Part shown: one piece after another, positions 4,418 through 59,526 of the stretch
How positions within the stretch are numbered: the stretch's first letter is position 1
Layout: each line of letters opens with the position of its first letter
Source: Octopus sinensis
Taxonomy: Eukaryota
Direction: 5' to 3'
Length of the DNA: 64,000 nucleotides
NCBI RefSeq assembly: GCF_006345805.1
Contig: NC_042998.1
Coordinates: 47,306,001 to 47,370,000 of the forward strand
Notes under the pieces: model-generated
Told to the model about the DNA's origin: nothing
Databases searched by the model: none
What the model saw: the letters and a program-made list of their open reading frames with translations, nothing else
Program-made: the position numbers and the translations under genes

Positions 4418-4958
4418 ATGCCCTGATGCAGTACCAGGCAGTGGCTCTCATGGCTTTTGATCTTAACTGATTGGAAGTGTTTTGTCTTGGGATAAAAGAT
4501 GGGCTACAGCAAATATTCTGCTCAATACTACAGATTTGCTTGTCAGTTGTTTGACCTTAACCAGTTGAGCATGTCCTTTAGTGGCTGACGATATGTGCAT
4601 CTCTGATCACGAGCAGAAGTAGTGGGGGAGCATCATAGCCATGTGTTGAGAGGGATTCTTTGGGGTTTGAATAATTCACCTCTGGAAACATGGGTGGTTC
4701 TTTCAACATCCTTAAACAACCCTTATTCAGGGTTCTTTTGAGCGGGATGCGCTACTCAACCTGAAGAAAATTCTAACTGGGCCCCACCTGCAAGGTCATG
4801 CGCTGTTTATCTTGATATGAGATCACCATGTCGCGCACATATGGTTGTGATGCATGTGCCTAGTGTACCCTAATCAGACGGGTAGTCATGATGGGTATAT
4901 TGGGCTTCGTATATTTTACCCCAGTGTCACTTTGATGGCATGAACTGCTCTCTCCCTC
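4418..4958 (+). mobile_element. Element E, copy 1 (non-coding, full 5' end), in (TAA)n/(TAG)n
   Basis: Begins ATGCCCTGATGCAGTACCAGG and ends ...gaactgctctctccctc(aat)n. It is the reverse complement of the six copies in the two clusters and has a small internal deletion. Confidence 0.85.
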
Positions 4959-5932: not shown

Positions 5933-6180
5933 GGGAGGCGCGTGGCTTAGTGGTTAAGGTGTCAGTACCATGATCGTAAGATTGTGCTTTCGATTCCTGG
6001 ACCGGGCGACGCGTTGCGTTCTTGAGCAAAACACTTCAGTTCACGTTGCTCCAGTCCACTCAGCTGGCAAAAATGAGTAACGCTGCGATGGACTGGCGGC
6101 CCGTCCAGCTGGGGGACACATACGCCATAGAAACCGGGGAAACCGGGCCCATGAGCCTGGCTAGGCTTTAAAAAGGGCAC
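5933..6180 (+). mobile_element. SINE family D (tRNA-derived head)
   Basis: GGAGGCGCGTGGCTTAGTGGTTAAGG...TTTCGATTCC. Homologous to 47406-47648 and to degenerate - strand copies near 12925-13045 and 3895-3930. Confidence 0.82.
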
Positions 6181-15463: not shown

Positions 15464-15953
15464 TGCACGCATAAATATGTAGTGTGCGTACTTTGTAATG
15501 TGACCTCATGTATTAGACACACTTAACAATATTATCTGCTCTCTTCTGACTTGTATGTAGAATTTTGAAATGGATATATTTTAGTATACCCATATCTAAT
15601 TCAGTAGCCGTGAGTAGTTTCAATACAAATGACGTACGGATTATTTGTTCCTGGAACAATTGTATTTTCTGAGATCAATTGGTACAAAAACATATGCCGA
15701 TGACCTGTGAATCCTCCATCACTATTTCAAGAATCACAGAGGAGAAAATCCCTCACCACTTACATCATTATGATGTAATCTCCGGTATTTTCCGAAATGA
15801 TGATAAATAATGTTTGCCATTGTCAAATATGTTCAATCTCCTTACTCACTAGTTCGCTAGTTCATATTCTCTACATTATTTATCTCGTGAAAATCATCAT
15901 GCCAATAATAAACCCACGCACTGGTTCTACTTCACATTATTATTATTATTATT

Positions 15954-16506
15954 GAGTGAGAGAGCAGTTCATGCCATCAAAGTGACACTGGGGTAAAATA
16001 TACGAAGCCCAATATACCCATCATGACTACCCGTCTGATAAGGGTACACCAGGCACATGCATCACAACCATATGTGCGCGACATGGTGATCTCATATCAA
16101 GATAAACAGCACATGACCTTGCAGGTGGGGCCCAGTTAGAATTTTCTTCAGGTTGAGTAGCCCATCCCGCTCAAACGGTCCCTGAATAAGGGTTGTTTAA
16201 GGATGTTGAAAGAACCACCCATGTTTCCAGAGGTGAACTATTCAAACCCCAAAGAATCCCTCTCAACACATGGCTATGATGCTCCCCCACTACTTCTGCT
16301 CGTGATCAGAGGTGCACATATCGTCAGCCACTAAGGGACATGTTCAACTGGTTAAGGTCAACAATGACAAGCAAATCTGTGGTATTGAGCAGAATATTGC
16401 GCTGTAGCCCATCTTTTATACCAAGACAAAACAAGTACATGATAACACTTCAATCAGTTAAGATCAGAAGCCATGAGAGCCACTGCCTGGTACTGCATCA
16501 GGGCAT
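15954..16506 (-). mobile_element. Element E, copy 2 (full length, ~553 bp)
   Basis: On +: gagtgagagagcag...cctggtactgcatcagggcat, with (ATT)n flanks. Confidence 0.85.
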
Positions 16507-16535
16507 TTATTATTATTATTATTTTTTTTATTATT

Positions 16536-16637
16536 GAGTGAGAGAGCAGTTCATGCCATCAAAGTGACACTGGGGTAAAATATACGAAGCCCAATATACC
16601 CATCATGACTACCTGTCTGATAAGGGCACACCAGGCA

Positions 16638-16640
<3 letters not shown>
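16536..16640 (-). mobile_element. Element E, copy 3 (5'-truncated, 105 bp)
   Basis: Retains only the gagtgagag end, then runs into (ATT)n. Confidence 0.8.
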
Positions 16641-16716
<76 letters not shown>

Positions 16717-16717
16717 T

Positions 16718-17989
16718 ACTTTCAATTTGCAATAATTACGTCTTGTCGTTAGCCTGGTTCGTTCTGTTAGTATTGACTGGAAAATCTCAGAGGATAGTGA
16801 CATTTTTATCTTCAACGACAGGCTTAAGATGATGTTCATACCAGTAAGCAGGAGTGCTGATTTTGCAGACCTTACATAATTTCCTATGTAAATACTGTCC
16901 TACCCTATCGTGGCGATTTTTGTATTCGTTTGGTGTCAGTACAGGACATTCCGAGACGAGTTCTTTTATTGTTTCTTCAAATGTATCACAGAATCTGCAT
17001 TTAGATTCTAAACCGTTTTGAAGAACGTTAGTTTAGTAGTTTTTAGTAAGCAAGCTTTGATCTTATGTCGCCAATATGAAACCCTCAGTCTCCGCTTTCA
17101 GTTCTGAACTTCTCAGCCACTGAAGGGTTGTTGTTTGGTCGACATCAGTATTTCAACTTCGAAGTATATACTATCCCTCCAGAGGCTTCTGGCTCCAGCG
17201 CTCCTCAATTTGTTTCTACCCGTTCTTCTTTGCAGTCTGCTTGATCTATTTTGCTTATTTTATGGCAGTGGTTTTAGGTTCTTTATCTATTTCAGGGTCA
17301 ATGCTAAGTTCCCTTGCAAATTTGCAAGCTTCCTTGACAACAGAATGTGATTTTTTGCTGCTTACATGTTTGCACACAAGCCGCAGCACCCACTCGTCTG
17401 TACTGTTCATTGCTATTGTGGAGATCTTATAGCACATTTCTACCTGCATCATTCCTCTTCCTCCATTACTTCTAGGTAAGTACAGACGAATAACGTCTGC
17501 TTTTGGATGGTGCATGTTCTTAGATGCTGGTAGTGTTCTTGTGTTCCTGTCCAGGCATTGGAGCTCTGTAAGATTCCAGATAATGATGTTAAAACTATAC
17601 TGGATCACTGAAATGCCAGGATTTTAATGGCTTCGATGCGATTTTTCGAGCTGAGTTCAGTTTTTATTATGAGTCTTATTCTCCTGTAATACCCCTTTCT
17701 TATATTTTTCCTTCATAGTAGCATGTTGTATACCATCTCCTTCGTTTATCCCATGGTATTGATAATTTTCTTGAGAGTCAAGCTTCTTGACGGTGTGGCG
17801 TCGGTATCTAATTTACTGGAAGCTGTTTGCGTGAGTTTGTCTCTTACAAAAGTTCATTTAGCACACTTATCAAGGCCAAAATCTGTCCCGATGTCTTTGC
17901 TGAACTCTTTAGCAGTTGTTAGCAGCTCAACTAGCTTTTCGTCATTTCTAGCAAACAGCTTCAGATCGTCCATATAAAACAGATGGTTT
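16718..17989 (-). pseudogene. R4/Dong LINE fragment (subfamily b), from RT motif YMDD to the start of the RLE domain
   Basis: Minus strand reads NHLFYMDDLKLFARND, HHPKADVIRLYLPRSNGGRGMMQ and later VEDKNVTI...FPVNTNRTNQAN...DVIIAN, with stops and frameshifts. (ATT)n on both sides. Confidence 0.85.
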
Positions 17990-17995
17990 ATTGTC

Positions 17996-18212
17996 GTATA
18001 ATTATTATTATTCTTATTATTATTTTATTATTATTATTATTATTATTATTATATTATCTATTATCAGTATCATTATCATTATCATATTATTATTATATTA
18101 TTATTATTATTATTATCATTAGCATTATCGTATCATTATCATTATTATTATATTATTATTATTATTATTATTATTATTATGTTTTTTATTATTATTAGTA
18201 TTAGTATTTTTA

Positions 18213-18246
<34 letters not shown>

Positions 18247-18316
18247 TATTATTATTATTATTTTATTATTATGTATTATTATTATTATTATTATTATATT
18301 AATCATTATCAGTATC

Positions 18317-18347
<31 letters not shown>

Positions 18348-18464
18348 ATTATATTTTATTTATTATCTTATTATTTTATTTTATTATTATTATTAGTTTT
18401 ATTATTATTATATTATTATTATATTATTATTATTATTATTATATATTATTAATTATTATTATTA

Positions 18465-18501
<37 letters not shown>

Positions 18502-18596
18502 CATTATTATCATTATCATTATTATCATTATCATTATTATCATTATCATTATTATCATTTCATTATTCATTATCATTATTATCATTATCATTATTA

Positions 18597-18632
<36 letters not shown>

Positions 18633-18672
18633 GTATTATATATTATTTATTATTATTATTATTATCATCATT
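17996..18672. repeat. Long degenerate (ATT)n/(ATC)n array, ~680 bp
   Basis: Seen directly; lies between the R4 subfamily b fragment and the 3' end of LINE copy 1. Confidence 0.95.
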
Positions 18673-21600
18673 CAGTAGTATATTTTTTATATCGTGCTTT
18701 CACTTCACTACCGAGCACAGCTCTGTGTGCCTTGGGTATGTGCTGTGGTTTGTTGTGATGCTCTGTTGGTTATTGTATGGAAAGTGTTCTGCGTAGGATG
18801 TGTGCAGTGCCTAGTAGTGCAATTTTCTGTATGTTATATGTGTTTGTAAGTCCTGGTGTTTTTGTTATGTATTTGTCTGAATATTTTTTTATCATGCCTA
18901 ATGCACCTATTATGATAGGAATTGTTTTTGTTTTTAGATTCCACATTCTGGTTACCTCTATTTCCAGGTCTTTGTATTTTGAATGTTTCTCCATTTCTTT
19001 TAGAGACACTTTGTCATCCGCTGGTATTGATACATCAATCAGAAAACATTTTTTTTTCTTCATGATCTCTGACAACTATGTCTGGTCTGTTGGCCTTAAT
19101 TTATCTATCTGTGTGTATTGGCATATCCCAGAGTATGGTTGCCTTCTCGTTTGATGTGACCTTTTCTGGTGTGTTCCTATACCATCTTTTTCTGTTGTTA
19201 TTCCATAATATTGGCATAGTTTCCAGTGTATATAGGTCCCAACTCTGTCGTGTCTGTGAATATATTCCTTCTTGGCCAGGACTGGGCAGCCAGAGATAAT
19301 ATGATTTATTGTTTCTTGTCCATCTCCACATATTCTGCAGTTACTTGTTATATTTCTTTTCATTACATGTTTTTGGTAATTTCTGGTGGGGAGGCTTTCG
19401 TCTTGTGCTGCAATTAAAAATCCTCTGTCTCTGCTTTGAGTCCTGAGCTTCTCAACCATTGTTGGGATTTTTCGTTGTCTATTTCTTTTGCATTTAGTTT
19501 AGTCCAGTATTTGCCATGAAGGGGCTTTTCTTGCCATCGTTTTATCATGGTTCGTTGCTGTTCTATTTTTAGTTTTGATTTCATTTGTTTTATAGCTTTT
19601 GTTGTTTCTTCTTCTTCTTCTTCTTCTTCTTCTTCTTCTTCCTTCTTCTTCTTCTTCTTCTTCTTCTTCTTCTTCTTCTCTTCTTCTTCTTCTTCTTCAT
19701 ATTTGTTAGATGGTATTATTTTTGTTTGCATTTGTCAGCTCCTTAAATATGAGAACAGATTTTGCTTTGCTCGTGTTTTGGCGCTATTTGTATCAATTTT
19801 CCCCTTCTGAAGTAGATATTTCTGCAGTCCTATGGTGGTTATTTTATAGTAGTTTTCCAGCTGTATAAGGCCTCTACCACCATCTATACGTTGTATATAT
19901 AGCCTTTCTATGTCAGATTTTGGGTGTGCATCCTAGATCCTGTCATTATTTTTCTTGTTTCCTATCTATTTTGGTCAGTTCATTTAGGTCCAGTTAAGGA
20001 TATTGTAGCTGTAACTTATAACTGGGACGGCTAAAGTGTTGATACCTATTATCTTGTTTTTAGCATTGAGCTCTGTTTTTAGTATTGATCTAACTCGTCT
20101 TAATATTCTTTTTTTTATTTTCTCTTTCATTGTGTGCGTGTGTGTCTTATCTAGTTCATGGATTCCTAAGTATTTGTAAGTTTGGCTTTGGTCTAATTCT
20201 TTAATTTATTGGTTTTATCTAGTGTGATGTTGCTACTCTTAACAGTTTTCTCTTTTTCAGTGTACTTTGGCGCATTTCTCTAATCAAATTTCATATCTAT
20301 TTCTTTGGTAAATAGTAGTGTTTCCAGCTGTTTGTCATTTGTAGCGTATAGTTTTAGGTCATCCATATTATAAAGGTGGCTGATCGTTTTGCCGTAACAT
20401 TTATATCCGCATCCAGTTCTGTTTAGCATATCCGATAGAGGTGACAGTGCCAAGCAGAAAAGGAGTGGAGAGAGCGTATCTCCCTGGAATATTCCTCTTC
20501 TAATGGGGATGTCTTTGGTTTTCACAAGTCCCTCTTTTGTTTGGAGCTGCAGCACTGTTGCCATTTATTCATAGAGTGTCCTATGTATTTTATAATTTGG
20601 TGCAATTTGTTCATGGCTAGTGTTTCGAGGATCCATGTGGGGGGATGCTATTATCAAACGCCTTTTTGTAGTCGATCCAGGCCTACTGAGCCTTTCTTCT
20701 TTCTGTGGCTGTCTTCAGTTATGGTTTTATTGATCATTAGTTGATCTTTACAGCCATATGAGCCTTTGCGGCATCCTTTCTGCTCTTCTGGAAACAGGTT
20801 GTTTTCGTCCAGGTGCTTGTTCAATCTTTGCGATATTACTGCAGTAAATGCTTTGTTCATTGTAGGGAGACAGGTTATAGGTTTGTAGTTTTTAGGTTTT
20901 GCTGTCTCATTTGATTTGGGAATTAAGATGGTTTTTCCCCTTCGTGAGCCATTCAGGCATTGTCTCTGTCTCTGCCAGTATGTTGTTAAAATTTTCAGCC
21001 AGCCTTTTGTGCATTCCTGTTAGATATTTCAACCAGAAGTTGGGGACCTTGTCATGCCCAGGTGCCTTCCAGTTGCTTAGACTTTGCAGTGCCTGGGTGA
21101 CCTCTTCGGTTGTTATGGGGGTCCAAAGTTGCTCAGATGCTGAGTTTGTTGTTTTAATACTCCTTTTTTTTGGTTGTTCGTTCGCCGACCATATTTCTCT
21201 CCAGAATTCTTCCACTTCTTCTGCCGTTGGTGCTGCAGTGATTTCTATTTTATTTTTGCCAAGTTCTTGGTAGAACTTTTTGTGGTTGGAGTTGAACTGT
21301 TTGTTTTGTTCAAAAAAAACGTTGGCGTTTCTCGTACCGGCGGATCCTTCGTGCTTTGGCAAGGATATCTTGCTTTAGCTTTTCTTTTATCTCAGGTAAA
21401 TCTTTTTCTGTGGTGTTGTATTTGCAGAGTATTTTTGTTTTCTTTTTGTTGTTCAGTAGCGTTGATTGTCTACTGACTTCATTAAGAATCGACAGATCTT
21501 TTCTCATTTTTTGTATTTTGTTTTGGATGTTATTTATCCACAGGGTTTGTTTGGGTAGTGGTACTCCTGTTTGGATGGGTTTGAGTGAGTATCCAGCTTC

Positions 21601-22801
21601 TTTTGTGACTGCAGTGGCTGCTGCGTATACTAAGTCATTTAGCTCAGTGATATCGATTTTTGTTTCAGTGGCTATTAGTTCCGTGACGGCTAGGTTTATG
21701 TTGTTTATAATTGATGTTGTTGTTTTGTCTATTTTGATTTTTTGGAGGTATGGTCGGTGGTCCATTTTGAGCTCTGTGGTTTTCAGTCCTTTGATTATTC
21801 TACTTTTTATGGTTTCATAATCATTAGGCTCCCCTTCGTTGTTTCCAGGTTTTAGATTTGTGTCGCTTTCTTTTTCTCATCCGTATGTTTGTTGTCGTGT
21901 TTTGGTTGCTGTTTGTCGTGTATTATATGTATCCTTACGGTCTGGGTTTGGTTTTTTGTTTACATCGTTTTGTTGGAAATGTTACGTTTGTCTTCGTGTT
22001 TTACTGTTTCAGTGTTATATTATTGGCATTGTTGTGTGGCTTCTATCTACATTTTCCTGATGTATTTTTTCTTTTAAATGTTCTATTTTCTATTTCTGAT
22101 ATTTTTTTGCGTTGAGAATATATCTCCGTATATTGCTAGTTTATTAGGGTTCATTGTTGTATCCAGGTCTTTATTTATGTTATTTTTCTTCCATATTTTG
22201 TATGTATGTGTTGTTGTATTTTCATTCTTTGGGTAGAGCACTGCTGTAAAGTAAGCGTATAGGATAGAAATGTATTCATCACGTGTCCATTTATGTCTTT
22301 TGGGTTTTATTTGCGGGACATAAGGAACAACGTCCGGCCCATTATTTTGACGGTCGTCATTTTCGTAGGGTACCGGTCCGTTCATTTCTGTTGTCACATT
22401 GTTTTGCACGTGTAGTTTTTCTTACATTTTATGTTGTAAGTTTACAGTACGTACTTCCCGATTGTTATTCTTGGGTTGAATAATACCGGTATCATTTAAT
22501 TTATTCGTAGTTTTTTTGTACATGGTGTTTGGGGCCGGAGATGATCTGGTGTTGATGGATCGTAATGTATCAAGCATGTTTACATGTGTCGTGTTAGAGG
22601 TGGAGATGATATCGAGTTAAAATACATCATTTCGTTTTGAAAATAGTAATAAATTTCAATGAGTATTACTTACTCGGATATAGTCCAATCCTTTGTCAGT
22701 TATTTTTTAGCTCCATGCGATGTTTTTGTTTCTGATGTTAGTGGATAGATTTCGGAGGACTGTTTTATCGCTCTCACATGTTTAACGTCCCCGGTATAAT
22801 C

Positions 22802-22804
<3 letters not shown>
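18673..22804 (-). mobile_element. Full-length but degenerate R4/Dong LINE (subfamily a, copy 1)
   Basis: Colinear with 42151-46110, with the same 3' UTR and the same 5' end. It has many frameshifts; ORF fragments include GIFQGDTLSPLLF, YNMDDLKL and CRICGDGQETINHIISGC. An expanded (GAA)n lies at ~19606-19698. Flanks are (ATT)n. Confidence 0.92.
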
Positions 22805-22864
<60 letters not shown>

Positions 22865-22874
22865 TATTATTATT

Positions 22875-23573
22875 CTATGTTTGAATGTTTGCTTTATGTT
22901 CTGTACAAGTTGGCTCCAAGTCTCACCCAGAGACCGAAAGAGAACAGTTGGAAGTTCTGTGCCATATATTTGGGGGGGGGTTGCTTTTTTTTGTGTACTA
23001 GTGGATGTCTAATACATAAAATAAAAAAAATAAAATAAAAAAATAAAAATAAAAAAAAGTTTGTTTAAACCTTGGAATACATAGAGAGTATTTTGCGTAG
23101 GATATGAGCAGTTCCCATGAGCCATATCTTTTGAATTTTGCCATTTTGGGGTTCTGGTATCTGAGTTAGGTAGCAATCAGTCCCTTTCGCTATCATTCCC
23201 AGGGCACCTATGACAACAGGTATTGTTTTAGTCTTCAGCTTCCACATTTTGCTGATTTCTATTCAAGATCTTTATATTTGCTCAGTTTTTGGTAGGTCTT
23301 GACAGATACGGTTATATCGATTGGGACAGTCATATCAATGAGGAGGCATGTTCTTTGTCGGAAGTGTTCAATATGATGTCTGGCCTATTTGCATCTATCT
23401 TCCGTCAGTTTTAATGGTGAAGTTCCAGAGGAGTGAGATGTGGTCATTTTCAAGCACTGGAGGTGGATTGTGTTCCCACCAGTTTTTTTCATGGGGGCAA
23501 ATCCAGGTTTTTGCAAATTACCCAGTGAATATATTGTGCAGCTCTATCATGCCTATGAGGTACTCTGTGGCAT
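22875..23573 (-). pseudogene. 5'-truncated R4/Dong LINE 3' end (subfamily c): RLE domain plus a distinct 3' UTR
   Basis: Reads HRHDRAAQYIHW...ENDHISLLWNFTIKTD...NRPDII...KYKDL...MWKLKTKTIPVVIGALG...GTAHILRKILS; stop at 23065. Its 3' UTR differs from subfamily a and ends in (AAT)n. Confidence 0.85.
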
Positions 23574-23574
23574 G

Positions 23575-23786
23575 ATATTATTATATTATTATTATTATAT
23601 ATTATTATTATTATTATTCTTATTTTATTATTATTATATTATTATTATTATCATCATCATTATAATCATTATCATTATTATTATATGTTTATTATTATTA
23701 TTATTATTATAATTATTATTATTATTATTATTATTATATTATTATTATTATTATCATTATATCTTATTATATCATTCATTATTACT
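23575..23786. repeat. (ATT)n/(ATC)n array
   Basis: Seen directly, between R4 subfamily c and E copy 4. Confidence 0.9.
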
Positions 23787-24339
23787 GAGTGAGAGAGCAG
23801 TGCATGCCATCAAAGTGACATGGGGTAAAATATACGAAGCCAGTATTCCCATCATGACTACCCGCTGATAAGGGTACACCAGGCACATGCATCACAACCA
23901 TATTGCGCGCGACATGGTGATCTCATATCAAGATAGACAGCGCGTTACCTTGCAGGTGGGGCCCAGTTAGAATTTTCTTCTGATCGAGTAGCCCATCCCG
24001 CTGAAAAGGTCCCTGAATAAGGATTGTTTAAGGATGTTGAATGAACCACCCATGTTTCCAGAGGTAAATTATCCAAAACTCTGAGAATTCCTTTCAACAC
24101 ACGGTTATGATGCTCCCCCCACTACCTCTGCTTCTGATCAGAGATGCACATATCGTCAGCCACTAAGGGACATGGTCAACTGGTTAAGGTCAAACAACCG
24201 AGAAGAAAATCTTTGGTATTGAGCAGAATATTTGCTGTAGTCCATCTTTTATACCAAGACAAAACAATGTATTTGATAACTCTCCCAATCCGTTAAGATC
24301 AGAAGCCATGAGAGCCACTGCCTGGTACTGCATCAGGGC

Positions 24340-24341
<2 letters not shown>
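23787..24341 (-). mobile_element. Element E, copy 4 (full length, more diverged)
   Basis: Same two termini as copy 2, with more substitutions; (ATT)n flanks. Confidence 0.85.
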
Positions 24342-24396
<55 letters not shown>

Positions 24397-24439
24397 TATT
24401 ATTACAGTACGATAGCTGTAACGTCCACTTCAGCTCATA

Positions 24440-25195
24440 TAAATAATTAGTGGAGGAAAAGGGCAACGACGTTCTTGGGGAGTCTTGGGCGTCGAAGAAG
24501 ATCAGCTAGTCGCCCTTTTCAAGAGAACTTTCGGGCCGGACCGATAGATAATTTCCAAAAATCCCTGGCCTGGCTGCGCTAATTGGGAGCTTTGCATGTT
24601 CGAGATAAACTTTACAGGCACGGAAGTGCCGTCAGCCGAGCATGTCCGAGATGCGCGCAGGATGACGAGATGGTTCTGCATGCATTCATCCAGTGCCCGA
24701 GCAATGCTGACTTATGGGTTTATGTCGAACACCTGCTATTGTGTGGGGGACGGATCCAGCTGTCAACTGAATCCATCGTGATCGACCCGCTGCCCTCCTA
24801 TAACAGGGAAGAAAAGGTTGTTTTTATATGCCTGGTGGCCATGGTGAAAAGGGTTGGATGGTGGACGAGATTCACGGGGCTGAAGACAAACAATTTTCTC
24901 TTTGGCCTATCCCTGATGAACTTCTTCAAATCTCACTCGAAAAGGAAAATAAAGGGAGAGAGGGGAGTGTTGTCTTCTAGCCTGTTTGCTGAAAGGTAGA
25001 TGAAAGTGGCGAGAATAGTGCGAGTGAACGGGCCTGCTCTGAGCATACACCTGTAGTTGGAAAAAAAGGAAAGGAAGAAAGGCACCCACCTCAAAAGTTA
25101 GGGAACCCATGGTTTTTTTAATGGAGTTTTCCATGAGCAGTCCTAGAACATCTTCTCCGTATTGAGGATTACAGATTATTTATTAAAAAAAAAAT
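24440..25195 (+). pseudogene. Tx1/L1-clade LINE 3' fragment with C-terminal zinc-binding region
   Basis: Reads GALHVRDKLYRHG...CPRCAQDDEMVLHAFIQCP (CxxC..H...C), with frameshifts upstream and an A-run at ~25185-25195. Confidence 0.8.
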
Positions 25196-39214: not shown

Positions 39215-39655
39215 ATTTCAAATTTTGCACAAGGTCTGTAATTCCGGGAAAGCGGGTAAGTTGATTACATCGCTCCCAGTGCTCGACTGGTACTTATTTT
39301 ATCAACCCCGAAAGAATGAAAGGCAAAGTCGACCTGGGCACAATTTGAACTCCGAACTTAAAGACGGACACAATGCCGTTAAGCATTTTGTCCTGCATAA
39401 AAGCGATTCTTGTTTCTTTATTGCCCATAAAGGGCTAAACATAGAGGGGACAAACAAGGAAAGACAAACGGATTAAGTCGATTACATTGACCCCAGTGCG
39501 TAACTGGTACGTAATTTATCCACCCCGAAAGGATGAAAGGCAAAGTCGACTTCGGCGGAATTTGAATTCAGAACGTAGAGGCAGAAGAAATACTACTAAG
39601 CATTTTGCCCGGTGTGCTATCGATTCTGCCAGCTCGCTGCCTTGAGCGTTGGTAA
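39215..39655 (-). mobile_element. Two tandem SINE family A units; further diverged copies at ~39825-39955 and ~39975-40085
   Basis: The reverse complement contains two consecutive A bodies with different tails. Confidence 0.8.
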
Positions 39656-41124: not shown

Positions 41125-41158
<34 letters not shown>

Positions 41159-41239
41159 TATTATTATTATTATTATTATATTATTATTATTATTATTATT
41201 ATATTATTATTATTATTATTATATATTATTATTATTATT

Positions 41240-41790
41240 GAGTGAGAGAGCAGTTCATGCCATCAAAGTGACACTGGGGTAAAATATACGAAGCCCAATA
41301 TACCCATCATGACTACCCGTCTGATAAAGGTACACCAGGCACATGCATCACAACCATATGTGCGCGACATGATGATCTCATATCAAGATAAACAGCACAT
41401 GACCTTGCAGGTGGGGCCCAGTTAGAATTTTCTTCAGGTTGAGTAGCCCATCCCGCTCAAACGGTCCCTGAATAAGGGTTGTTTAAGGATGTTGAAAGAA
41501 CCACCCATGTTTCCAGAGGTGAACTATTCAAACCCCAAAAAGAATCCCTCTCAACACATGGCTATGATGCTCCCCCACTACTTCTGCTCGTGATCAGAGA
41601 TGCACATATCGTCAGCCACTAAGGGACATGCTCAACTGGTTAAGGTCAAACAACTGACAAGCAAATCTGTGGTATTGAGCAGAATATTTGCTGTAGCCCA
41701 TCTTTTATACCAAGACAAAACAATGTACATGATAACACTTCCAATCAGTTAAGATCAGAAGCCATGAGAGCCACTGCCTGGTACTGCATC
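41240..41790 (-). mobile_element. Element E, copy 5 (missing only ~6 nt at the 5' end)
   Basis: Near-identical to copy 2; (ATT)n flanks. Confidence 0.85.
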
Positions 41791-41804
41791 AATTATTATT
41801 ATTA

Positions 41805-41868
<64 letters not shown>

Positions 41869-41876
41869 CATTATTA

Positions 41877-42082
41877 AGCTGGCAGAATCGTTAGCACACC
41901 GGGCCACGTGCTTAGCGGTATTTCGTTTGCCGTTACGTTCTGAGTTCAAATTCCGCCGAGGTCGACTTTGCCTTTCATTCTTTCGGGGTCGATAGTTTAA
42001 ATTCCAGTGAAACACTGGGGCCGATGTAATCGACCAATCCTCTCCCCCCAAGATTTCAGGCCTTGTGACTATAGTAGAAAGG
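41877..42082 (+). mobile_element. SINE family A with (ATT)n tail
   Basis: agctggcagaatcgttagc...tagtagaaagg, then attattatt up to the LINE 3' end at 42151. Confidence 0.88.
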
Positions 42083-42153
<71 letters not shown>

Positions 42154-42247
42154 TAGTTTTATTTTTATAGCGTGTTTTCACTTCACTACCGAGCGCAGCT
42201 CTGTGTGCCTTGGGTATGTGCTGTGATTTGTTGTGATGCTCTGATGG

Positions 42248-43336
42248 TTATTGTATGGAAAGTGTTCTGCGTAGGATGTGTGCAGTGCCTAGTAGTGCAA
42301 TTTTCTGTATGTTATATGTGTTTGTAAGTCCTGGTGTTTTTGTTATGTATTTGTCTGAATATTTTTTTATCATGCCTAATGCACCTACTATGATAGGAAT
42401 TGTTTCTGTTTTCAGATTCCACATTCTAGTTACCTCTATTTCCAGGTCTTTGTATTTTGAGAGTTTATCCATTTCTTTTAGAGACACGTTGTCATCTACT
42501 GGTATTGATACATCAATTAGAAAGCATTTTTTTTCTTCTTGATCTCTGTCAACTATATCTGGTCTGTTGGCCTTAATTTCTCTATCTGTGTGTATCGGCA
42601 TATCCCAGAGTATGGTTGCTTTCTCGTTTTCTGTGACCTTTTCTGGTGTGTGCCTATACCATCTTTTTTCTGTTGTTATTCCATAATGTTGGCATAGCTT
42701 CCAATGTATGTAGGTTCCAACTCTGTCATGTCTGTGAATATATTCCTTCTTAGCCAGGACTGGGCAGCTAGAGATAATATGATTTATTGTTTCTTGTCCA
42801 TCTCCACATATTCTGCAGTTACTTGTAATATTTCTTTTCATTACATGTTTTTGGTAATTTCTGGTGGGGAGGCTTTGGTCTTGTGCTGCAATTAAAAATC
42901 CCTCTGTTTCTGCTTTGAGTCCTGAGCTTCTCAACCATTGCTGTGATTTTTCTTTGTCTATTTCTTTTGCGTTTAGGTTAGTGCAGTATTTACCATGAAG
43001 GGGCTTTTCTTGCCATCGTTTTATCATGGTTCGTTGCTGTTCTATTTTTAGTTTGGATTTCATTTGTTTTATAGCTTTTGTTGTTTCTTCATCATCTTCT
43101 TCTTCTTCTTCGTGTTTATTAGGTGGTATGATTTCTTGTTTGTATTTGTCAGCTTCCTTAAATACTGAGAGCAGTTTTTTGTTTTGCTCGTGTTTTGCTG
43201 CTATCTGGATCAGTTTTCCTTCCTTCTGGAGTAGGTATTTTTGCAGTCCTATGGTGGTTATTTTATAGTAGTTTTCCAGCTGTATAAGGCCTCTACCACC
43301 TTCTATACGTTGTATATATAGTCTTTCTATGTCCGA
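42248..43336 (-). CDS. R4/Dong ORF, C-terminal part: thumb, acidic linker, CCHC knuckle and restriction-like (PD-D/ExK) endonuclease
   Basis: The frame is open from SDIERLYIQRIEGGRGL through CRICGDGQETINHIISSC, RHDRV and RPDIV...LIDVSIP...KYKDL to the stop at 42248. It is joined to the upstream ORF by restoring one base at 43337-43339. Confidence 0.9.
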   Translation of the reverse strand, partial: SDIERLYIQRIEGGRGLIQLENYYKITTIGLQKYLLQKEGKLIQIAAKHEQNKKLLSVFKEADKYKQEIIPPNKHEEEEEDDEETTKAIKQMKSKLKIEQQRTMIKRWQEKPLHGKYCTNLNAKEIDKEKSQQWLRSSGLKAETEGFLIAAQDQSLPTRNYQKHVMKRNITSNCRICGDGQETINHIISSCPVLAKKEYIHRHDRVGTYIHWKLCQHYGITTEKRWYRHTPEKVTENEKATILWDMPIHTDREIKANRPDIVDRDQEEKKCFLIDVSIPVDDNVSLKEMDKLSKYKDLEIEVTRMWNLKTETIPIIVGALGMIKKYSDKYITKTPGLTNTYNIQKIALLGTAHILRRTLSIQ

Positions 43337-45885
43337 TTTGGGTGATGCATCCTAGATCCTGTCAGTATTTTTCTTGTTTTCCTATCTATTTTGGACAGTT
43401 CATTTCGTGTCCAGTTAAGGATATTGTAGCTGTAACTTATAACTGGGACAGCTAAAGTGTTGATACCTATTATCTTGTTTTTAGCATTGAGCTCTGTTTT
43501 TAGTATTGATCTAACTCGTCTATAATATTCTTTTTTTATTTTCTCTTTCATTTGTGTGTGTTGTGTCTTATCTAGTTCATGGATTCCTAAGTATTTGTAA
43601 GTTTGGCTTTGGTCTAATTCTTTTATCTCATTGGTTTTATCTAGTGTGATGTTGTTACTCTTAACTAGTTTTCCTCTTTTCATGGTTACTTTGGCGCATT
43701 TTTCTAATCCAAATTTCATATCTATTTCTTTGGTAAATCCATGAACTGTCTTTAATAGTGTTTCCAGCTGTTTGTCATTTGCAGCGTATAGTTTTAGGTC
43801 ATCCATATATAAAAGGTGGCTGATCGTTTTGCCGTAACATTTATATCCGCATCCAGTTCTATTTAGCATATCAGATAGAGGTGACAGTGCCAAGCAGAAA
43901 AGGAGTGGAGAGAGCGTGTCTCCCTGGAATATTCCTCTTCTAATGGGGATGTATTTGGTTTTCATGAGTCCCTCTTTTGTTTGGAGGTGTAGGACTGTTT
44001 GCCATTTATTCATAGAGTGCTCTATGAATTTTATGATTGTTGGTGCTACTTTGTTAATGGCTAGTGTTTCGAGGATCCATGTGTGGGGGATGCTATCAAA
44101 CGCCTTTTTGTAGTCAATCCAGGCCATACTGAGGCCTTTCTTTTGTCTGTGGCTGTCTTCAGTTACGGCTTTATTAATCATTAGTTGATCTTTACAGCCA
44201 TATGAGCCTTTGCGGCATCCTTTCTGCTCTTCTGGGAACAGTTTGTTTTCGTCCAGGTGCTTGTTCAGCCTTTGCGATATCACTGCAGTAAATGCCTTGA
44301 ACATAGTAGGGAGGCAGGTTATTGGTCTGTAGTTTTCTGGTTTTGCTGTTTCATTTGATTTGGGAATTAAGATGGTTTTCCCCTTCGTGAGCCATTCAGG
44401 CATTGTCTCTGGCTCTGCTAGTATGCTGTTAAAGTTTTCAGCCAGCTTTTTGTGCATTCCTGTTAGATATTTCAACCAGAAGTTGGGGATCTTGTCATGC
44501 CCAGGTGCCTTCCAGTTGCTTAGTTTTTGCAGTGCCTGGGTGACCTCTTCAGTTGTTATGGGGGTCCAAAGTTGTTCAGATGCCGAGTTTGTTATTTTGA
44601 TACTCCCCTTTTTTGGCTGTTCGTTTGCCGACCATATTTCTCTCCAGAATTCTTCCAATTCTTCTGCCGTTGGTGCTGCAGTGACTTCTATTTTATTTTT
44701 TCCCAGTTCTTGGTAGAACTTTTTGGGGTTGGAGTTGAACTTTTTGTTCTGTTCAAAGAAGCGTTGGCGTTTCTCGTACCGGCGGATCCTTTGAGCTTTG
44801 GCAAGGATATCTTGCTTCAGCTTTTCTTTTATCTCCGGCAAATCTTTTTCTGTGATGTTATATTTGCGGAGCATTTTTGTTCTCTTTTTGTTGCTTAGTA
44901 GCGTTGATTGTTTGCTGATTTCATTAAGAATCGACAGGTCTTTTCTAATTTTTTTTATTTTGTTTTGGATGTTATTTATCCACAGGGTTTGTTTGGGTGG
45001 TGGTACTCCTGTTTGAGCGGGTTTGGGTGAGTATCCAGGTTCTTTTGTGGCTGCAGTGGCTGCTGCGTATATCAAGTCATTTAGTTCGGTGATATCACTT
45101 TTTTTTGTTTCAGTGGCTAGTTCAGTGACGGCTAGGTTAATGCTGTTTATAATTGGTGTTGTTATTTCGTTTATTTTTATTCTTGGGAGGTATGGTCGGT
45201 GGTCCATTTTGGGCTCTGTGGTTTTCAGTTCTTTGATTATTTTTATATTATCATAATCATCAGGCTCCCCTTCGTTGTTTACATCGTGTTTGTTGGGAAT
45301 GTTGCGTTTGTCTTCGTGTTTTACAGTTTCAGTGTTTATATTATTGGGCATTGTTGTGTGGCTTCTATCTACATTTTCCTGGTGTATTTTTTCTTTTAAA
45401 TGTTCTATTTCTATTTCTGATATTTTTTTGGCTTTGAGAATGTATATTCGTACGTTAGCTAATTTATTAGGGTTCATTGCTGTATCCAAGTCTATATCTC
45501 TATTATTTTCCTTCCATATTTTATATGTATGTGTTGTTGTATTTTCATTTTTTGGGTAGAGCATTGCTGTGAAGTATGCGTGTAAGATAGAAATGTATTC
45601 CTCACGTGTCCATTTACGTCTTTTGGGTTTTATTTGCGGGACATGAGGTACAACGTTCGGCCCATTATTTTGACGGTCGTCATTTTCGTAGGGTACCGGT
45701 CCGTTTATTTCTATTGTCACATTATTTCGCACGTGTAGTTTTTCGTACATTTTTTGTTGTAAGTTTAATGTACGTACCGCTCGATTGTTATTCTTGGGTT
45801 GAATAGTATCGGTGGCATTTAATTTCTTCGTAGTTCCTTTGTACATGGTGTTTGAGGTCGGGGATGATCGTGATGTTCCACGCAT
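43327..45885 (-). CDS. R4/Dong ORF, N-terminal 852 aa: Myb-like motif plus complete reverse transcriptase, ending at a frameshift
   Basis: Motifs seen: KRRKWTREEY (Myb-like, inference), WKAPGHDKIPN, NYRPITCL, WIDYKKAFDSIPH, GIFQGDTLSPLLF, LLYMDDLKL, GLEKCAK, YKYLGI. Confidence 0.92.
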   Translation of the reverse strand: MRGTSRSSPTSNTMYKGTTKKLNATDTIQPKNNNRAVRTLNLQQKMYEKLHVRNNVTIEINGPVPYENDDRQNNGPNVVPHVPQIKPKRRKWTREEYISILHAYFTAMLYPKNENTTTHTYKIWKENNRDIDLDTAMNPNKLANVRIYILKAKKISEIEIEHLKEKIHQENVDRSHTTMPNNINTETVKHEDKRNIPNKHDVNNEGEPDDYDNIKIIKELKTTEPKMDHRPYLPRIKINEITTPIINSINLAVTELATETKKSDITELNDLIYAAATAATKEPGYSPKPAQTGVPPPKQTLWINNIQNKIKKIRKDLSILNEISKQSTLLSNKKRTKMLRKYNITEKDLPEIKEKLKQDILAKAQRIRRYEKRQRFFEQNKKFNSNPKKFYQELGKNKIEVTAAPTAEELEEFWREIWSANEQPKKGSIKITNSASEQLWTPITTEEVTQALQKLSNWKAPGHDKIPNFWLKYLTGMHKKLAENFNSILAEPETMPEWLTKGKTILIPKSNETAKPENYRPITCLPTMFKAFTAVISQRLNKHLDENKLFPEEQKGCRKGSYGCKDQLMINKAVTEDSHRQKKGLSMAWIDYKKAFDSIPHTWILETLAINKVAPTIIKFIEHSMNKWQTVLHLQTKEGLMKTKYIPIRRGIFQGDTLSPLLFCLALSPLSDMLNRTGCGYKCYGKTISHLLYMDDLKLYAANDKQLETLLKTVHGFTKEIDMKFGLEKCAKVTMKRGKLVKSNNITLDKTNEIKELDQSQTYKYLGIHELDKTQHTQMKEKIKKEYYRRVRSILKTELNAKNKIIGINTLAVPVISYSYNILNWTRNELSKIDRKTRKILTGSRMHHPNRT

Positions 45886-46109
45886 GTTTACATGTGTTGT
45901 GTTAGAGGTGGAGATAATATCGAGTCAAAATACATCATTTCGTTTCGAAAATAGTAATAAATTTCAATTAGTATTACTTACTCGGATACAGTCTAATTCT
46001 TTGTTAGTAAATCTTTGGCTCCATAGGATGTCCTTGTTTTCGATGTTTGTGGATAGATTTCGGAGCTCTGTATTTTCCTTCTTACATCTTAAACGTCCCC
46101 GGTGTTCCG

Positions 46110-46166
<57 letters not shown>

Positions 46167-46184
46167 ATTATTATTATTATTATT

Positions 46185-46419
46185 GAGTGAGAGAGCAGTT
46201 CATGCCATCAAAGTGACACTGGGGTACAATATACGAAGCCCAATATACCCATCATGACTACCCGTCTGATAAGGGTACACCAGGCACATGCATCACAACC
46301 ATATGTGCGCGACATGGTGATCTCATATCAAGATAAACAGCGCATGACCTTGCAGGTGGGGCCCAGTTAGAATTTTCTTCAGGTCGAGTAGCCCATCCCG
46401 CTCAAACGGTCCCTGAATA
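46185..46419 (-). mobile_element. Element E, copy 6 (5'-truncated)
   Basis: Retains the gagtgagag end and stops at ggtccctgaata. It lies directly upstream of LINE copy 2, separated by (ATT)n. Confidence 0.83.
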
Positions 46420-46458
46420 TTATTATTATTATTATTATCATCATCATCATCATCATCA

Positions 46459-46500
<42 letters not shown>

Positions 46501-46514
46501 CATCATCATCATCA

Positions 46515-46578
<64 letters not shown>

Positions 46579-46592
46579 TATTATTATCATCA

Positions 46593-46626
<34 letters not shown>

Positions 46627-46634
46627 CATCATCA

Positions 46635-46671
<37 letters not shown>
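46420..46671. repeat. (ATT)n/(ATC)n array
   Basis: Seen directly, between E copy 6 and R4 subfamily d. Confidence 0.9.
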
Positions 46672-46672
<1 letters not shown>

Positions 46673-47387
46673 GGCGTTGCACAGTATACAATATCGTGAG
46701 GTTTTTCATTGAAAATATTGGTATTTGTACTGTTTGTCAATTCACAACAAGGACCTCAGATAGACTGTACTTTACACAATATGCGTGGTGCTGTTCCAAG
46801 TAAAGCCGACTTTTGCAATACATCTAGATTGTAGGGTATTTGTAAAGTTCTCTGATGCTTTTTGACAGGTTGGGTGGTATTGAACCTAATGCTCTGATGA
46901 CAATAGGGATAACCTTTATGTTTGACTCACGTAGCTGCCACATCTTAGCGATCTCAATTCTCAGGTCTCCATATTTATCAACATTACCTCTATCTTTCAA
47001 GATGATATGTCGATCTCTTGGCACTGCTACGTCGATTATTAGGCACTCTTGTTTGTCCCTCCTAAAGGTAACTATATCTGGCCTTCCGTAATCTAACACC
47101 TTGTCCGTCTGGAAATCAAAGTCCCGGAGGATTTTTGCTATTCCCTTTTCGTCCATTACCTTTTCCGGTGTATGTTGGTACCAATCACCCGTATCCTCAT
47201 ATCCATAGTAGCCAGAGGAGGTTGTGGGCTACTTTGTCATGTCTACGCTTGTACTCTTTCTGCGCAAGACTTTCACAAGCACTAACAATGTGAGTCACGC
47301 TTTCGACCCTCTTCCCACACATTCTGCAGAGGTCCGATGCACTTGTGTGGTATATATTCTTTTTGGTTGAGTTGGTATTCAATATAT
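46672..47387 (-). pseudogene. 5'-truncated R4/Dong LINE 3' end (subfamily d): CCHC plus RLE
   Basis: Reads CRMCGKRVESVTHIVSAC, RRHDKV, GRPDIV...LIIDVAVP...KYGDL and VLQKSALLGTA. It has its own 3' UTR and an (AAT)n tail. Confidence 0.87.
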
Positions 47388-47405
47388 CATTATTATTATT
47401 CTTGT

Positions 47406-47648
47406 AGAGGCGCGTGGCTTAGTGGTTAGGGTGTTGGCCTCATGATCGTGAGACTGAGGTTTCGATTCCTGGACCGGGCGAATCGTTGTGTTCTCAAGCA
47501 AAACACTTCATTTCTCATTGCTTTAGCACACTCAGCTGGCAAAAATGAATAAACCTTAGACGGACCGGCGTCCCGTCTAGGCGAACAATATATACTCCAT
47601 AGAAACGGGCCTTATCAGTCTATATCACTCAGGAAGGAACTTTACTTT
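47406..47648 (+). mobile_element. SINE family D
   Basis: gaggcgcgtggcttagtggttaggg...cactcagctggcaaaaatga. Confidence 0.8.
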
Positions 47649-47654
47649 CAAATG

Positions 47655-47783
47655 CCACCAAGGTCGACTTTGCCTTTCAACCTTTCGGGGTCAATGAAAT
47701 AAGTACCAGTTAAGCACTGGGGTCAATATAATCGACTGGTCCCAACCCCAAATCTCAGGCTTGGTGGCTCTAGTAGAAAGGAT
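47655..47783 (+). mobile_element. SINE family A, 3' part, with ATT/ATC tail
   Basis: aaggtcgactttgcc...tagtagaaagg-attactattatc. Confidence 0.8.
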
Positions 47784-47787
47784 TACT

Positions 47788-47827
<40 letters not shown>

Positions 47828-47868
47828 CAATCTTCATCATCATGATTATTATTATTATTATTATTATT

Positions 47869-48248
47869 GAGTGAGAGAACAGTGCATGCCATCAAAGTGA
47901 CACTGGGGTAAAATATACGAAGTCCAGTATACCCATCATGACTACCCGTCTGATAAGGGTACACCAAGCACATGCATCACAACCGTATGTGCGCGACATA
48001 GTGATCTCATATCCAGATAGACAGCGCATGACTTTGCAGGTGGGGCCCAGTTAGAATTTTCTTCAGGTCGAGTAGCCGATCCCGCTCAAAAGGTCCCTGA
48101 ATAAGGATTGTTTAAGGATGATGAACGAAACACTCATGTTTCCAGAGGTGAATTATCCAGACCCAAAAGAATTATTCTTAACACATGGCTATGATGCTCC
48201 CCCACTACTTCTGCTTGATCAGAGATGCTACTAAGGGACATATTCAAC

Positions 48249-48249
<1 letters not shown>
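47869..48249 (-). mobile_element. Element E, copy 7 (5'-truncated, diverged)
   Basis: Retains the gagtgagag end and stops after ctaagggacatattcaact; (ATT)n flanks. Confidence 0.82.
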
Positions 48250-48309
<60 letters not shown>

Positions 48310-48344
48310 CATTATTATTATTATTATCATCATCATCATTATTG

Positions 48345-48497
48345 TACATTCTGAGTTCAAATTCCGCCGAGGTCGACTTTGCCTTTTATCCTTTCGGGGT
48401 CGAAAAATTAAGTACTAGTTGAAAGCTGGAGCCGATGTAATAGACACATCCCCTCTCTCAAAATTGCTGCCTTTGTGACAAAATTTGAAACCATTCT
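48345..48497 (+). mobile_element. SINE family A (5'-truncated)
   Basis: ttctgagttcaaattccgccgaggtcgac...aaaatttgaaaccatt. Confidence 0.8.
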
Positions 48498-59174: not shown

Positions 59175-59526
59175 GGTGTTGTTTTAACCCAGATGGTGCC
59201 CAACTGACCCTACTATATTGTATAGTCGATAAAATCCAAACCAAACAATACGCACCCACGAAATTAAAACCATAAAATTGCAACAATTTATCCATCGCAT
59301 TCTGTACATACATACACACACACAAACACACACACACACACACATATATATATACCCACCCACATATATACATATATATATATATGCATACATAGTTATA
59401 TATATATATATACACATATATACATACACACACACGCACACACACGCACATACACACACACGCACATACACGCACAGACTCAAACACACATGCATATATA
59501 TATGTGTGTGTGTGTGTGTGTACATG

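What the first reader, a model, noticed from the sequence alone, without database searches (positions are those of the whole stretch)
15954..16506. Element E: a ~550-nt non-coding, TAA-targeted retroelement with no recognisable tRNA, 5S or 7SL head
Seen: 7 copies in 64 kb (4418, 15954, 16536, 23787, 41240, 46185, 47869). Every copy sits in (TAA)n with the same polarity as the R4/Dong LINEs and keeps the same end (...ctctcactc + (AAT)n). All three short copies have lost the opposite end, which is the signature of target-primed reverse transcription. Three copies start at the same base (ATGCCCTG) and a fourth ~6 nt inside it, which argues for a defined transcript rather than random LINE truncation. 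It has no long ORF, no clear B-box and no convincing match to the three LINE 3' UTRs in the window. Inference: a non-autonomous partner that borrows the R4/Dong site-specific RLE machinery.
Basis: partly seen in the sequence, partly recalled or inferred. Interest (0 to 1): 0.75.

Follow-up and report, generated by a model that had tools for sequence, protein, structure and literature searches.

The report
Non-coding retroposon targeting TAA microsatellites
Element E is a real, roughly 555-bp non-coding mobile element that copies itself only into (TAA)n microsatellites, almost certainly by borrowing the enzymes of the Dong/R4-like LINEs beside it; it is an ordinary kind of genomic parasite with an unusual target and no recognisable head or LINE-derived tail.

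Summary
Seven copies (88.6-100% identical to the reference copy) lie in 64 kb. All are embedded in (TAA)n in one polarity and share the 3' end ...CTCTCACTC|AATAAT. Three start at the same base, one starts 6 nt inside, and three are 5'-truncated (105, 235, 381 bp). E has no ORF over 59 codons and no Rfam or tRNA match. It shows no sequence or structure similarity to the four RLE-type (R2-superfamily, Dong-like) LINE families that occupy the same TAA tracts in the same polarity. Shared diagnostic substitutions define older and younger subfamilies, as expected for a retroposon with successive source copies.

Best reading: a non-autonomous, TAA-specific retroposon spread by target-primed reverse transcription, using Dong/R4-type LINE proteins in trans. 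Three things are unproven: which LINE serves it, how its RNA is recognised, and what fixes its 5' end. Bombyx Dong uses a 5' HDV-like ribozyme, but I found no significant one in E.

E is not a canonical SINE, and not an R2-type SIDE of any LINE in the window. No public sequence of E or of its host genome could be retrieved, so genome-wide tests and a Repbase/Dfam check remain undone.

Verdict: new member of a known kind; moderate interest.

The parts
4418..4958 (+). E copy, full length, with a 15-nt internal deletion. Solo insertion in a compound TAA/TAG microsatellite with unique flanks.
15954..16506 (-). E copy, full length (reference copy). Starts ATGCCCTG and ends CTCTCACTC.
16536..16640 (-). 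E copy, 5'-truncated to the last 105 nt. Lies in tandem with the reference copy, downstream of the LINE-B tail.
23787..24341 (-). E copy, full length, older subfamily.
41240..41791 (-). E copy lacking the first 6 nt.
46185..46419 (-). E copy, 5'-truncated to 235 nt. Lies between the LINE-C tail and the 5' end of LINE-A1.
47869..48249 (-). E copy, 5'-truncated to 381 nt, older subfamily.
42151..46111 (-). LINE-A1. Full-length RLE-type (R2-superfamily, Dong-like) LINE in (TAA)n, with its ORF split by one frameshift. Candidate supplier of RT and endonuclease.
18673..22795 (-). LINE-A2, the second copy of family A (87-94% identical to A1), degenerate.
16717..17997 (-). LINE-B, a 5'-truncated RLE LINE of another family, in (TAA)n.
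46672..47388 (-). LINE-C, a 5'-truncated RLE LINE of a third family, in (TAA)n.
22875..23573 (-). LINE-D, a 5'-truncated RLE LINE of a fourth family, in (TAA)n.

Best explanation
E is a non-autonomous, non-coding retroposon family of about 555 bp that inserts specifically into (TAA)n microsatellites in one orientation.

Shown by the sequence: it is a discrete unit with a fixed 3' end, a recurrent 5' end and 5'-truncated copies. It has the same target and polarity as four co-resident RLE-type LINE families. It has subfamily structure. It has no coding capacity, no small-RNA head, and no similarity to those LINEs.

Inferred mechanism: an E transcript ending in (UAA)n is taken in trans by the ORF protein of a Dong/R4-like LINE. 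The restriction-like endonuclease nicks the TTA strand of a TAA tract. The freed 3' end pairs with the (UAA)n tail and primes reverse transcription. Incomplete cDNAs give the truncated copies, and the 5' junction is closed by A/T microhomology with the repeat. Each insertion adds new TAA units, so elements pile up head-to-tail in arrays.

Not settled: whether recognition needs only the tail, needs E's own 3' stem-loops, or depends on an unseen LINE that shares E's 3' end. Also not settled is whether the 5' end comes from a promoter, from self-cleavage as in Bombyx Dong, or from annealing of upstream repeat sequence.
For: There are seven copies with a common 3' end, and three identical 5' ends plus one 6 nt inside. 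If truncation were random over 555 positions, three identical ends among seven would have a chance of about 1e-4 (my arithmetic). All flanks are TAA in the sense polarity, although such tracts cover 2.6% of the window. All TAA tracts but one adjoin E or an RLE LINE. Five LINE copies of four families show the same target and polarity. LINE-A has RVT_1 plus a CCHC/RLE C-terminus that matches solved R2 proteins. Dong-type elements are documented TAA-specific RLE LINEs in silkworm, mosquito and a snail (PMC3812793; PMC1635306). The three truncated copies join the repeat at A/T-rich positions (ATGTG, TATTC, AGTTG). Two subfamilies are defined by 7 and 3-4 shared variants, and pairwise JC distances run from 0.013 to 0.10. 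There is no ORF over 59 codons and no protein remnant. One solo insertion has unique flanks.
Against: No LINE in the window shares E's 3' or 5' end. Smith-Waterman scores equal those of shuffles, and the 3' covariance model hits only E. The usual sign of a SINE/LINE or SIDE/LINE partnership is therefore missing. No transcript, no empty site and no polymorphism could be examined. Covariation in the 3' hairpin is inconclusive, with 6 wobble-preserving changes against 4 disruptive ones and no compensatory pair. Only 64 kb of this genome was available.
Confidence: 0.78

Rival explanations
1. E is a short internally deleted derivative (SIDE-type) of a fifth Dong-like LINE family that lies outside this window. 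It would keep that LINE's 5' UTR, possibly with a ribozyme or promoter, and its 3' UTR, and would depend strictly on that LINE's protein.
For: This is how the only well-studied non-autonomous partners of R2 arose (PMC3414825). R2-type proteins recognise their own 3' UTR. E has a strongly folding 3' module (-36 kcal/mol for the last 120 nt, against -16 to -23 for the LINE ends). The four LINE families each have a private 3' UTR, so a fifth is plausible.
Against: No such LINE is in the window. E shares nothing with the 5' UTR of LINE-A or with the 3' ends of LINEs A-D. There is no trace of LINE coding sequence at a deletion junction.
Confidence: 0.25
2. The E copies are simply 5'-truncated 3' ends (a long 3' UTR) of a longer autonomous LINE. 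The common 5' end would be a truncation hot spot.
For: LINE families normally leave many 5'-truncated copies, and LINEs B, C and D in this window are such fragments.
Against: Four of seven copies end within 6 nt of one position, three of them at the same base, and each is followed upstream by TAA repeats rather than more element sequence. No copy extends further. No ORF remnant is present.
Confidence: 0.06
3. E is mobilised by an APE-type LINE whose own tail is (TAA)n, as in I-clade elements, and not by the RLE LINEs. The TAA flanks would reflect tails plus a preference for A/T-rich sites.
For: The Drosophila I element ends in TAA repeats (PMC3747384). A zf-RVT LINE fragment of another type lies at 24583-24996.
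Against: Upstream flanks are also TAA tracts in all seven copies, including the solo copy with unique outer flanks. No APE LINE with a TAA tail is seen in the window, whereas five RLE LINE copies share the exact target and polarity.
Confidence: 0.05
4. E is not mobile. It would be a microsatellite-associated sequence multiplied by unequal exchange or segmental duplication of TAA-rich regions.
For: Copies cluster in two TAA-rich arrays (15.9-24.4 kb and 41.1-48.3 kb).
Against: The arrays differ in content and order. The copies have different flanking repeat lengths and variants. Nested 5' truncations with one fixed 3' end, and one fixed orientation relative to the repeat, are not expected from recombination. 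One copy is solo on the other strand.
Confidence: 0.03

Closest known systems
R2 SIDEs (short internally deleted elements) of Drosophila (PMC3414825)
   Same: They are short non-coding elements that use the machinery of a site-specific RLE LINE. They take the same target as the LINE, and their 5' junction variation is typical of TPRT.
   Different: SIDEs consist of the R2 5' ribozyme joined to the R2 (or R1) 3' UTR. E shares neither end with any LINE in the window, has no significant HDV-like fold, and targets a microsatellite rather than rDNA.
Dong (Bombyx), DongAg, DongBg and Rex6: TAA-specific RLE LINEs of the R4 clade (PMC3812793, PMC1635306, PMC3774820)
   Same: They have the same target, (TAA)n, with fixed polarity and a TAA tail. 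LINEs A-D of the window are of this kind.
   Different: Those are autonomous elements of 4-5 kb that encode RT and RLE, whereas E encodes nothing. Bombyx Dong has a tested 5' HDV-like ribozyme that cuts at the TAA/element junction. None could be shown for E or for LINE-A.
EhSINE1/EhSINE2 with EhLINE1/2 of Entamoeba histolytica (RLE-type LINEs; PMC1635306)
   Same: They are non-autonomous partners of LINEs that encode a restriction-like endonuclease. From my own knowledge, not checked here: they are about 0.5 kb long and lack a tRNA, 5S or 7SL head.
   Different: EhSINEs share their 3' end with the partner LINE (my own knowledge, not checked here). They are not targeted to a defined sequence.
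Canonical SINEs (tRNA-, 5S-, 7SL- or snRNA-headed, with a LINE-derived tail)
   Same: They are short, non-coding, spread by TPRT, have subfamilies, and often outnumber their LINEs.
   Different: E has no pol III head or A/B boxes. The sense strand has T4 runs at nt 77, 333 and 511. The tail is not derived from any LINE seen here.

Membership tests
Canonical SINE | 5' head derived from tRNA, 5S, 7SL or snRNA, with an internal pol III promoter | tested here: not met
   Rfam found no match at gathering score in the window, and none at E<=10 in two E copies with flanks. ARAGORN found no tRNA. T4 runs lie inside the sense strand.
Canonical SINE | 3' tail shared with the partner LINE | tested here: not met
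   Tested against LINEs A-D only. Local alignment scores equal those of shuffles, and a covariance model of E's last 105 nt hits only E. A partner outside the window cannot be excluded.
Canonical SINE | Short, non-coding, with TPRT hallmarks (fixed 3' end, repeat tail, 5' truncations) | tested here: met
SIDE (internally deleted derivative of an R2-superfamily LINE) | 5' end identical to the parent LINE's 5' end or ribozyme | tested here: inconclusive
   E does not match the LINE-A 5' UTR. The 5' ends of LINEs B-D are absent from the window.
SIDE (internally deleted derivative of an R2-superfamily LINE) | 3' end identical to the parent LINE's 3' UTR | tested here: not met
   No match to the 3' ends of LINEs A, B, C or D.
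Dong/R4-dependent, TAA-specific elements | Insertion in (TAA)n in one fixed polarity, with a TAA tail | tested here: met
   7 of 7 E copies and 5 of 5 RLE LINE copies
Dong/R4-dependent, TAA-specific elements | An RLE-encoding LINE with the same target is present in the same genome | tested here: met
   LINE-A has RVT_1 and zf-RVT. Its RT and CCHC/RLE region match solved R2 proteins at E 5e-29 and 5.5e-5. Families B-D are 37-47% identical in the C-terminal domain. Clade assignment by phylogeny was not done.
Dong/R4-dependent, TAA-specific elements | Mobilised in trans by the LINE protein | not testable with these tools
   This needs a retrotransposition assay or population data.
Elements with a 5' HDV-like self-cleaving ribozyme (R2, R4, Dong) | Nested double pseudoknot (P1-P2-P3-P1.1-P4) with cleavage at the 5' junction | tested here: inconclusive
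   Rfam was negative. A strict descriptor gave no hit at the 5' end in 2 of 3 full-length copies, and none in LINE-A. A fold can be drawn for nt 3-73, but a descriptor that lax hits 16% of shuffles. R2-type ribozymes are known to be sequence-flexible, so only a cleavage assay can decide.

The most novel reading that the evidence does not exclude
E may have no LINE-derived recognition module at all. Several unrelated Dong-like LINE families may copy any RNA that ends in (UAA)n, because the tail base-pairs with the nicked TTA strand. That would be a 'relaxed', tail-and-target-driven template choice in the otherwise stringent R2 superfamily. Any transcribed sequence caught between two TAA tracts would then become a mobile cassette, with its ends defined by the repeats rather than by a promoter or ribozyme.
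Probability: 0.2. Interest if true: 0.6.

Novelty: new member of a known kind. Interest (0 to 1): 0.4.

Why it matters
Non-autonomous partners of site-specific, RLE-type LINEs are rare in the literature. The main examples are the R2 SIDEs in Drosophila and the EhSINEs in Entamoeba. I found no description of a partner for the TAA-specific Dong lineage in the open-access text I could search.

E outnumbers its presumed helpers in this window, 7 copies against 5. It also shares no tail with them. It is therefore a natural system for asking how R2-superfamily proteins choose their RNA template, a question of current interest because these enzymes are being developed for site-specific gene insertion.

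E also shows how microsatellites, SINE tails and repeat-specific retroelements can feed one another and build long TAA-rich arrays.

Tried and rejected
(1) Small-RNA head. Rfam at gathering score and at E<=10, and ARAGORN, found nothing.

(2) Ribozymes. Rfam was negative. My own HDV-like descriptors were either negative (strict) or non-specific (relaxed: 80-90% of shuffles hit; medium: 16%). The nearest hammerhead-core matches (CUGAUGC, CUGACGA) lack the other conserved nucleotides.

(3) Similarity to LINE ends. Smith-Waterman against shuffles, blastx and tblastx, and a covariance model of E's 3' module were all negative.

(4) Covariation in the 3' hairpin. No compensatory pair was found. An apparent one that I saw by eye was off by one register.

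(5) More copies from public data. Two metagenome scans, one GTDB genome scan and one viral scan with E 21- to 36-mers gave 0 hits. Exact look-up of the LINE-A ORF found nothing on record. The best protein relatives are only 45-48% identical, so the host genome is not in those collections. Their contigs (L001, L002) contain no E.

(6) Full-text search for six E or SINE oligomers gave 0 papers.

(7) Helitron, DNA-transposon and Penelope-like readings were rejected. E has no terminal signatures, it has a fixed 3' end with nested 5' truncations, and it has no hammerhead.

(8) Host identification. No host exon was found among the ORFs. The SINE core reminds me of cephalopod or mollusc SINEs, but that is memory and was not tested.

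Full report
**Observation**

The reported stretch, window 15954-16506, reads on the minus strand as ATGCCCTGATGCAG...GAACTGCTCTCTCACTC followed by AATAAT repeats. Six have their sense on the minus strand and one (4418-4958) on the plus strand.

An alignment shows three copies beginning at the same base and a fourth (41240-41791) beginning 6 nt inside. The other three are cut back to the last 105, 235 and 381 nt. All seven keep the same 3' end.

- The 3' junction 26-mer occurs seven times, and the 5' junction 24-mer three times. Neither occurs in 100 dinucleotide-preserving shuffles.
- A covariance model of the last 105 nt, run with filters off over both strands, finds the same seven copies and nothing else.
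- Every copy has TAA repeats, read in the element's sense, on both sides.
- Such tracts make up only about 1.66 kb, or 2.6%, of the window. All but one of them (52995-53044) touch either E or an RLE-type LINE.
- The plus-strand copy is a solo insertion in a compound TAA/TAG microsatellite with unique outer flanks.

**What E is not**

- **Not coding.** The consensus (555 nt, 45% GC, CpG observed/expected 0.28) has no stop-free frame longer than 59 codons. It shows no blastx or tblastx similarity to RLE LINE proteins.
- **No small-RNA head.** Rfam gives no match at gathering score anywhere in the window, and none at E<=10 in two E copies with their flanks. ARAGORN finds no tRNA.
- **A poor pol III template.** The sense strand has T4 runs at nt 77, 333 and 511. 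This conclusion is an inference.
- **Not a DNA transposon, Helitron or Penelope-like element.** It has none of their terminal signatures.

**The neighbours**

The window holds four families of LINEs with a C-terminal CCHC zinc knuckle and a restriction-like endonuclease, in five copies.

- **Family A:** 42151-46111 and 18673-22795.
- **Family B:** 16717-17997.
- **Family C:** 46672-47388.
- **Family D:** 22875-23573.

All are in (TAA)n, in the same polarity as E, and all are followed by a TAA tail.

LINE-A carries Pfam RVT_1 and zf-RVT. Its RT and C-terminal region match solved R2 retrotransposon proteins, at E 5e-29 and 5.5e-5. Its ORF is split by one frameshift. Families B-D are only 37-47% identical to A in the C-terminal domain.

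TAA-specific insertion by RLE LINEs is the documented behaviour of Dong in silkworm, mosquito and the snail Biomphalaria, and of Rex6 (PMC3812793; PMC1635306). I did not build a phylogeny, so 'R4/Dong' is an architectural and behavioural assignment.

The elements form two head-to-tail arrays, at 15.9-24.4 kb and 41.1-48.3 kb. Within them each element sits in the tail of the next.

**Is E related to those LINEs?**

No.

- Local alignment scores between E and the 3' parts of A-D, the 5' UTR of A, or all of A equal those of shuffled E.
- The structure-aware model of E's 3' module does not touch any LINE 3' end.
- The LINE 3' UTRs have nothing in common with one another either, except the TAA tail.

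E is therefore not a SIDE of any LINE present here. It also lacks the LINE-derived tail that defines classical SINE/LINE pairs. A partner outside the window cannot be excluded.

**Features that bear on mechanism**

- **5' junctions.** The three truncated copies join the upstream repeat at A/T-rich positions (ATGTG, TATTC, AGTTG) that overlap the repeat by 1-3 nt. This is what microhomology-mediated 5' joining after TPRT would give.
- **Subfamilies.** Copies 23787 and 47869 share seven diagnostic variants. Copies 15954, 41240 and 46185 share three or four. Pairwise distances run from 0.013 to 0.10. That is the subfamily pattern of a retroposon with successive source copies.
- **RNA structure.** The whole RNA folds slightly better than shuffles (z = -1.9). 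The last 105 nt form a long hairpin plus a short one. The substitutions in these stems are 6 wobble-preserving against 4 disruptive, with no compensatory pair, so conservation of the structure is not demonstrated.

**The 5' end**

That is one possibility.

The literature adds a specific lead. Bombyx Dong and Ascaris R4 carry a 5' HDV-like ribozyme that cuts a read-through transcript exactly at the TAA/element junction. It releases a 21-nt (TAA)7 product in vitro (PMC3774820). I therefore searched for such a fold.

- Rfam's HDV-type models were negative.
- A strict descriptor found nothing at the 5' end in two of three full-length copies, and nothing in LINE-A.
- A pseudoknot can be drawn for nt 3-73: P1 3-9/31-37, P2 13-17/69-73, P3 18-20/28-30, P4 40-45/52-56, candidate catalytic C66. 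It has mismatches in P1 and P3 and lacks the L3 signature.
- A descriptor that tolerant hits 16% of shuffled sequences. A still looser one hits 80-90%.

This is not evidence. Because R2-type ribozymes are very flexible in sequence, only a cleavage assay can decide.

A third possibility needs neither promoter nor ribozyme. A transcript that starts upstream and carries (UAA)n on its 5' side would yield cDNA whose end anneals to the TAA target. That would give uniform junctions, as proposed for R2 elements whose RNA keeps upstream 28S sequence (PMC3774820).

**Most likely mechanism**

E RNA ending in (UAA)n is used in trans by the protein of a Dong-like LINE. The RLE nicks the TTA strand. The tail pairs with the nicked strand and primes reverse transcription. 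Premature termination gives the short copies. Each insertion splits one TAA tract and adds another, so targets regenerate and arrays grow.

The target, polarity, unit structure and truncation pattern are shown. The enzyme source, the recognition signal and the origin of the 5' end are inferred. I put 0.78 on this general statement. Within it, an unseen parent LINE (SIDE-type origin) is about as likely as tail-only recognition.

**Comparison with the known**

E works like an R2 SIDE or an EhSINE, that is, a headless non-coding parasite of an RLE LINE. It fails the defining tests of a canonical SINE (head, LINE tail). It also fails those of a SIDE of any LINE present here.

A 2026 repeat annotation of Octopus vulgaris lists five recently active Dong-R4 families, with 1129 recent insertions, and 893 unclassified SINE families (PMC13282606). 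Elements like E may therefore already sit unnamed in automated libraries. I could not verify the host of this window, and I could not query Repbase or Dfam.

**Limits**

No sequence of E or of the host genome could be retrieved.

- Four collection scans gave nothing.
- The exact look-up of the LINE-A ORF gave nothing.
- The closest LINE proteins are only 45-48% identical and come from other organisms.
- A full-text search for E oligomers gave nothing.

All conclusions rest on seven copies in 64 kb.

**Verdict**

It is a new member of a known kind (a non-autonomous retroposon of a site-specific LINE) with an unusual target and no recognisable borrowed parts. Interest is moderate, at 0.4. It would rise if a genome-wide search shows that no LINE shares E's ends.

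Noticed in passing
window 16717-17997, 18673-22795, 22875-23573, 42151-46111, 46672-47388: Four distinct RLE-type LINE families (37-47% identical in the C-terminal domain) all target (TAA)n in the same polarity. Their 3' UTRs share nothing but the TAA tail. LINE-A1's ORF of about 1200 codons is split by one frameshift near 43330.
   Followed up: partly
window 15936-24404 and 41126-48343: There are two head-to-tail arrays of TAA-specific elements (E and LINEs A-D), in which each element sits in the tail of another. They include a 669-bp (TAT)n tract at 17997-18665. This looks like self-renewing target generation.
   Followed up: partly
window 41877-42082, 47401-47795, 48356-48445, 55646-55780, 5935-6137, 39259-39566 and others: A tRNA-headed SINE superfamily with a shared core (GGTCGACTTTGCCTTTCA...GGGGTCGAT...AAGTACCAGT) occurs at 12 or more places. 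Several copies end in (ATT)n, which is TAA on the opposite strand. The tail of the copy at 41877-42082 is the tract that holds LINE-A1, so SINE tails may seed targets for Dong-like LINEs and E.
   Followed up: partly
window 59985-60349: A 184-bp tandem duplication (2 copies, 86% matches) made of the same SINE core.
   Followed up: no
E consensus nt 88-94 (e.g. window 16413-16419, minus strand): A perfect TATAAAA lies inside E, about 90 nt from its 5' end. Transcripts driven from it would lack the element's 5' end. Its role, if any, is unknown.
   Followed up: no
window 24583-24996 (+) and 58575-59715: There is a fragment of a different, zf-RVT-bearing LINE, and there are remnants of DDE transposases broken up by microsatellites. 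No host exon was recognised anywhere in the window.
   Followed up: no
L001 13435-14000 and L002 13678-14300 (ENA ERZ25067903): The closest public relatives of LINE-A (45-46% identity) end in two or three TAA units followed by T10 and a shared downstream sequence. This suggests a different or composite target in that organism.
   Followed up: no
whole window: Microsatellite density is extreme (129 TRF rows in 64 kb: AT, TG, TACA, ATAG, TAA and others) at about 35% GC.
   Followed up: no
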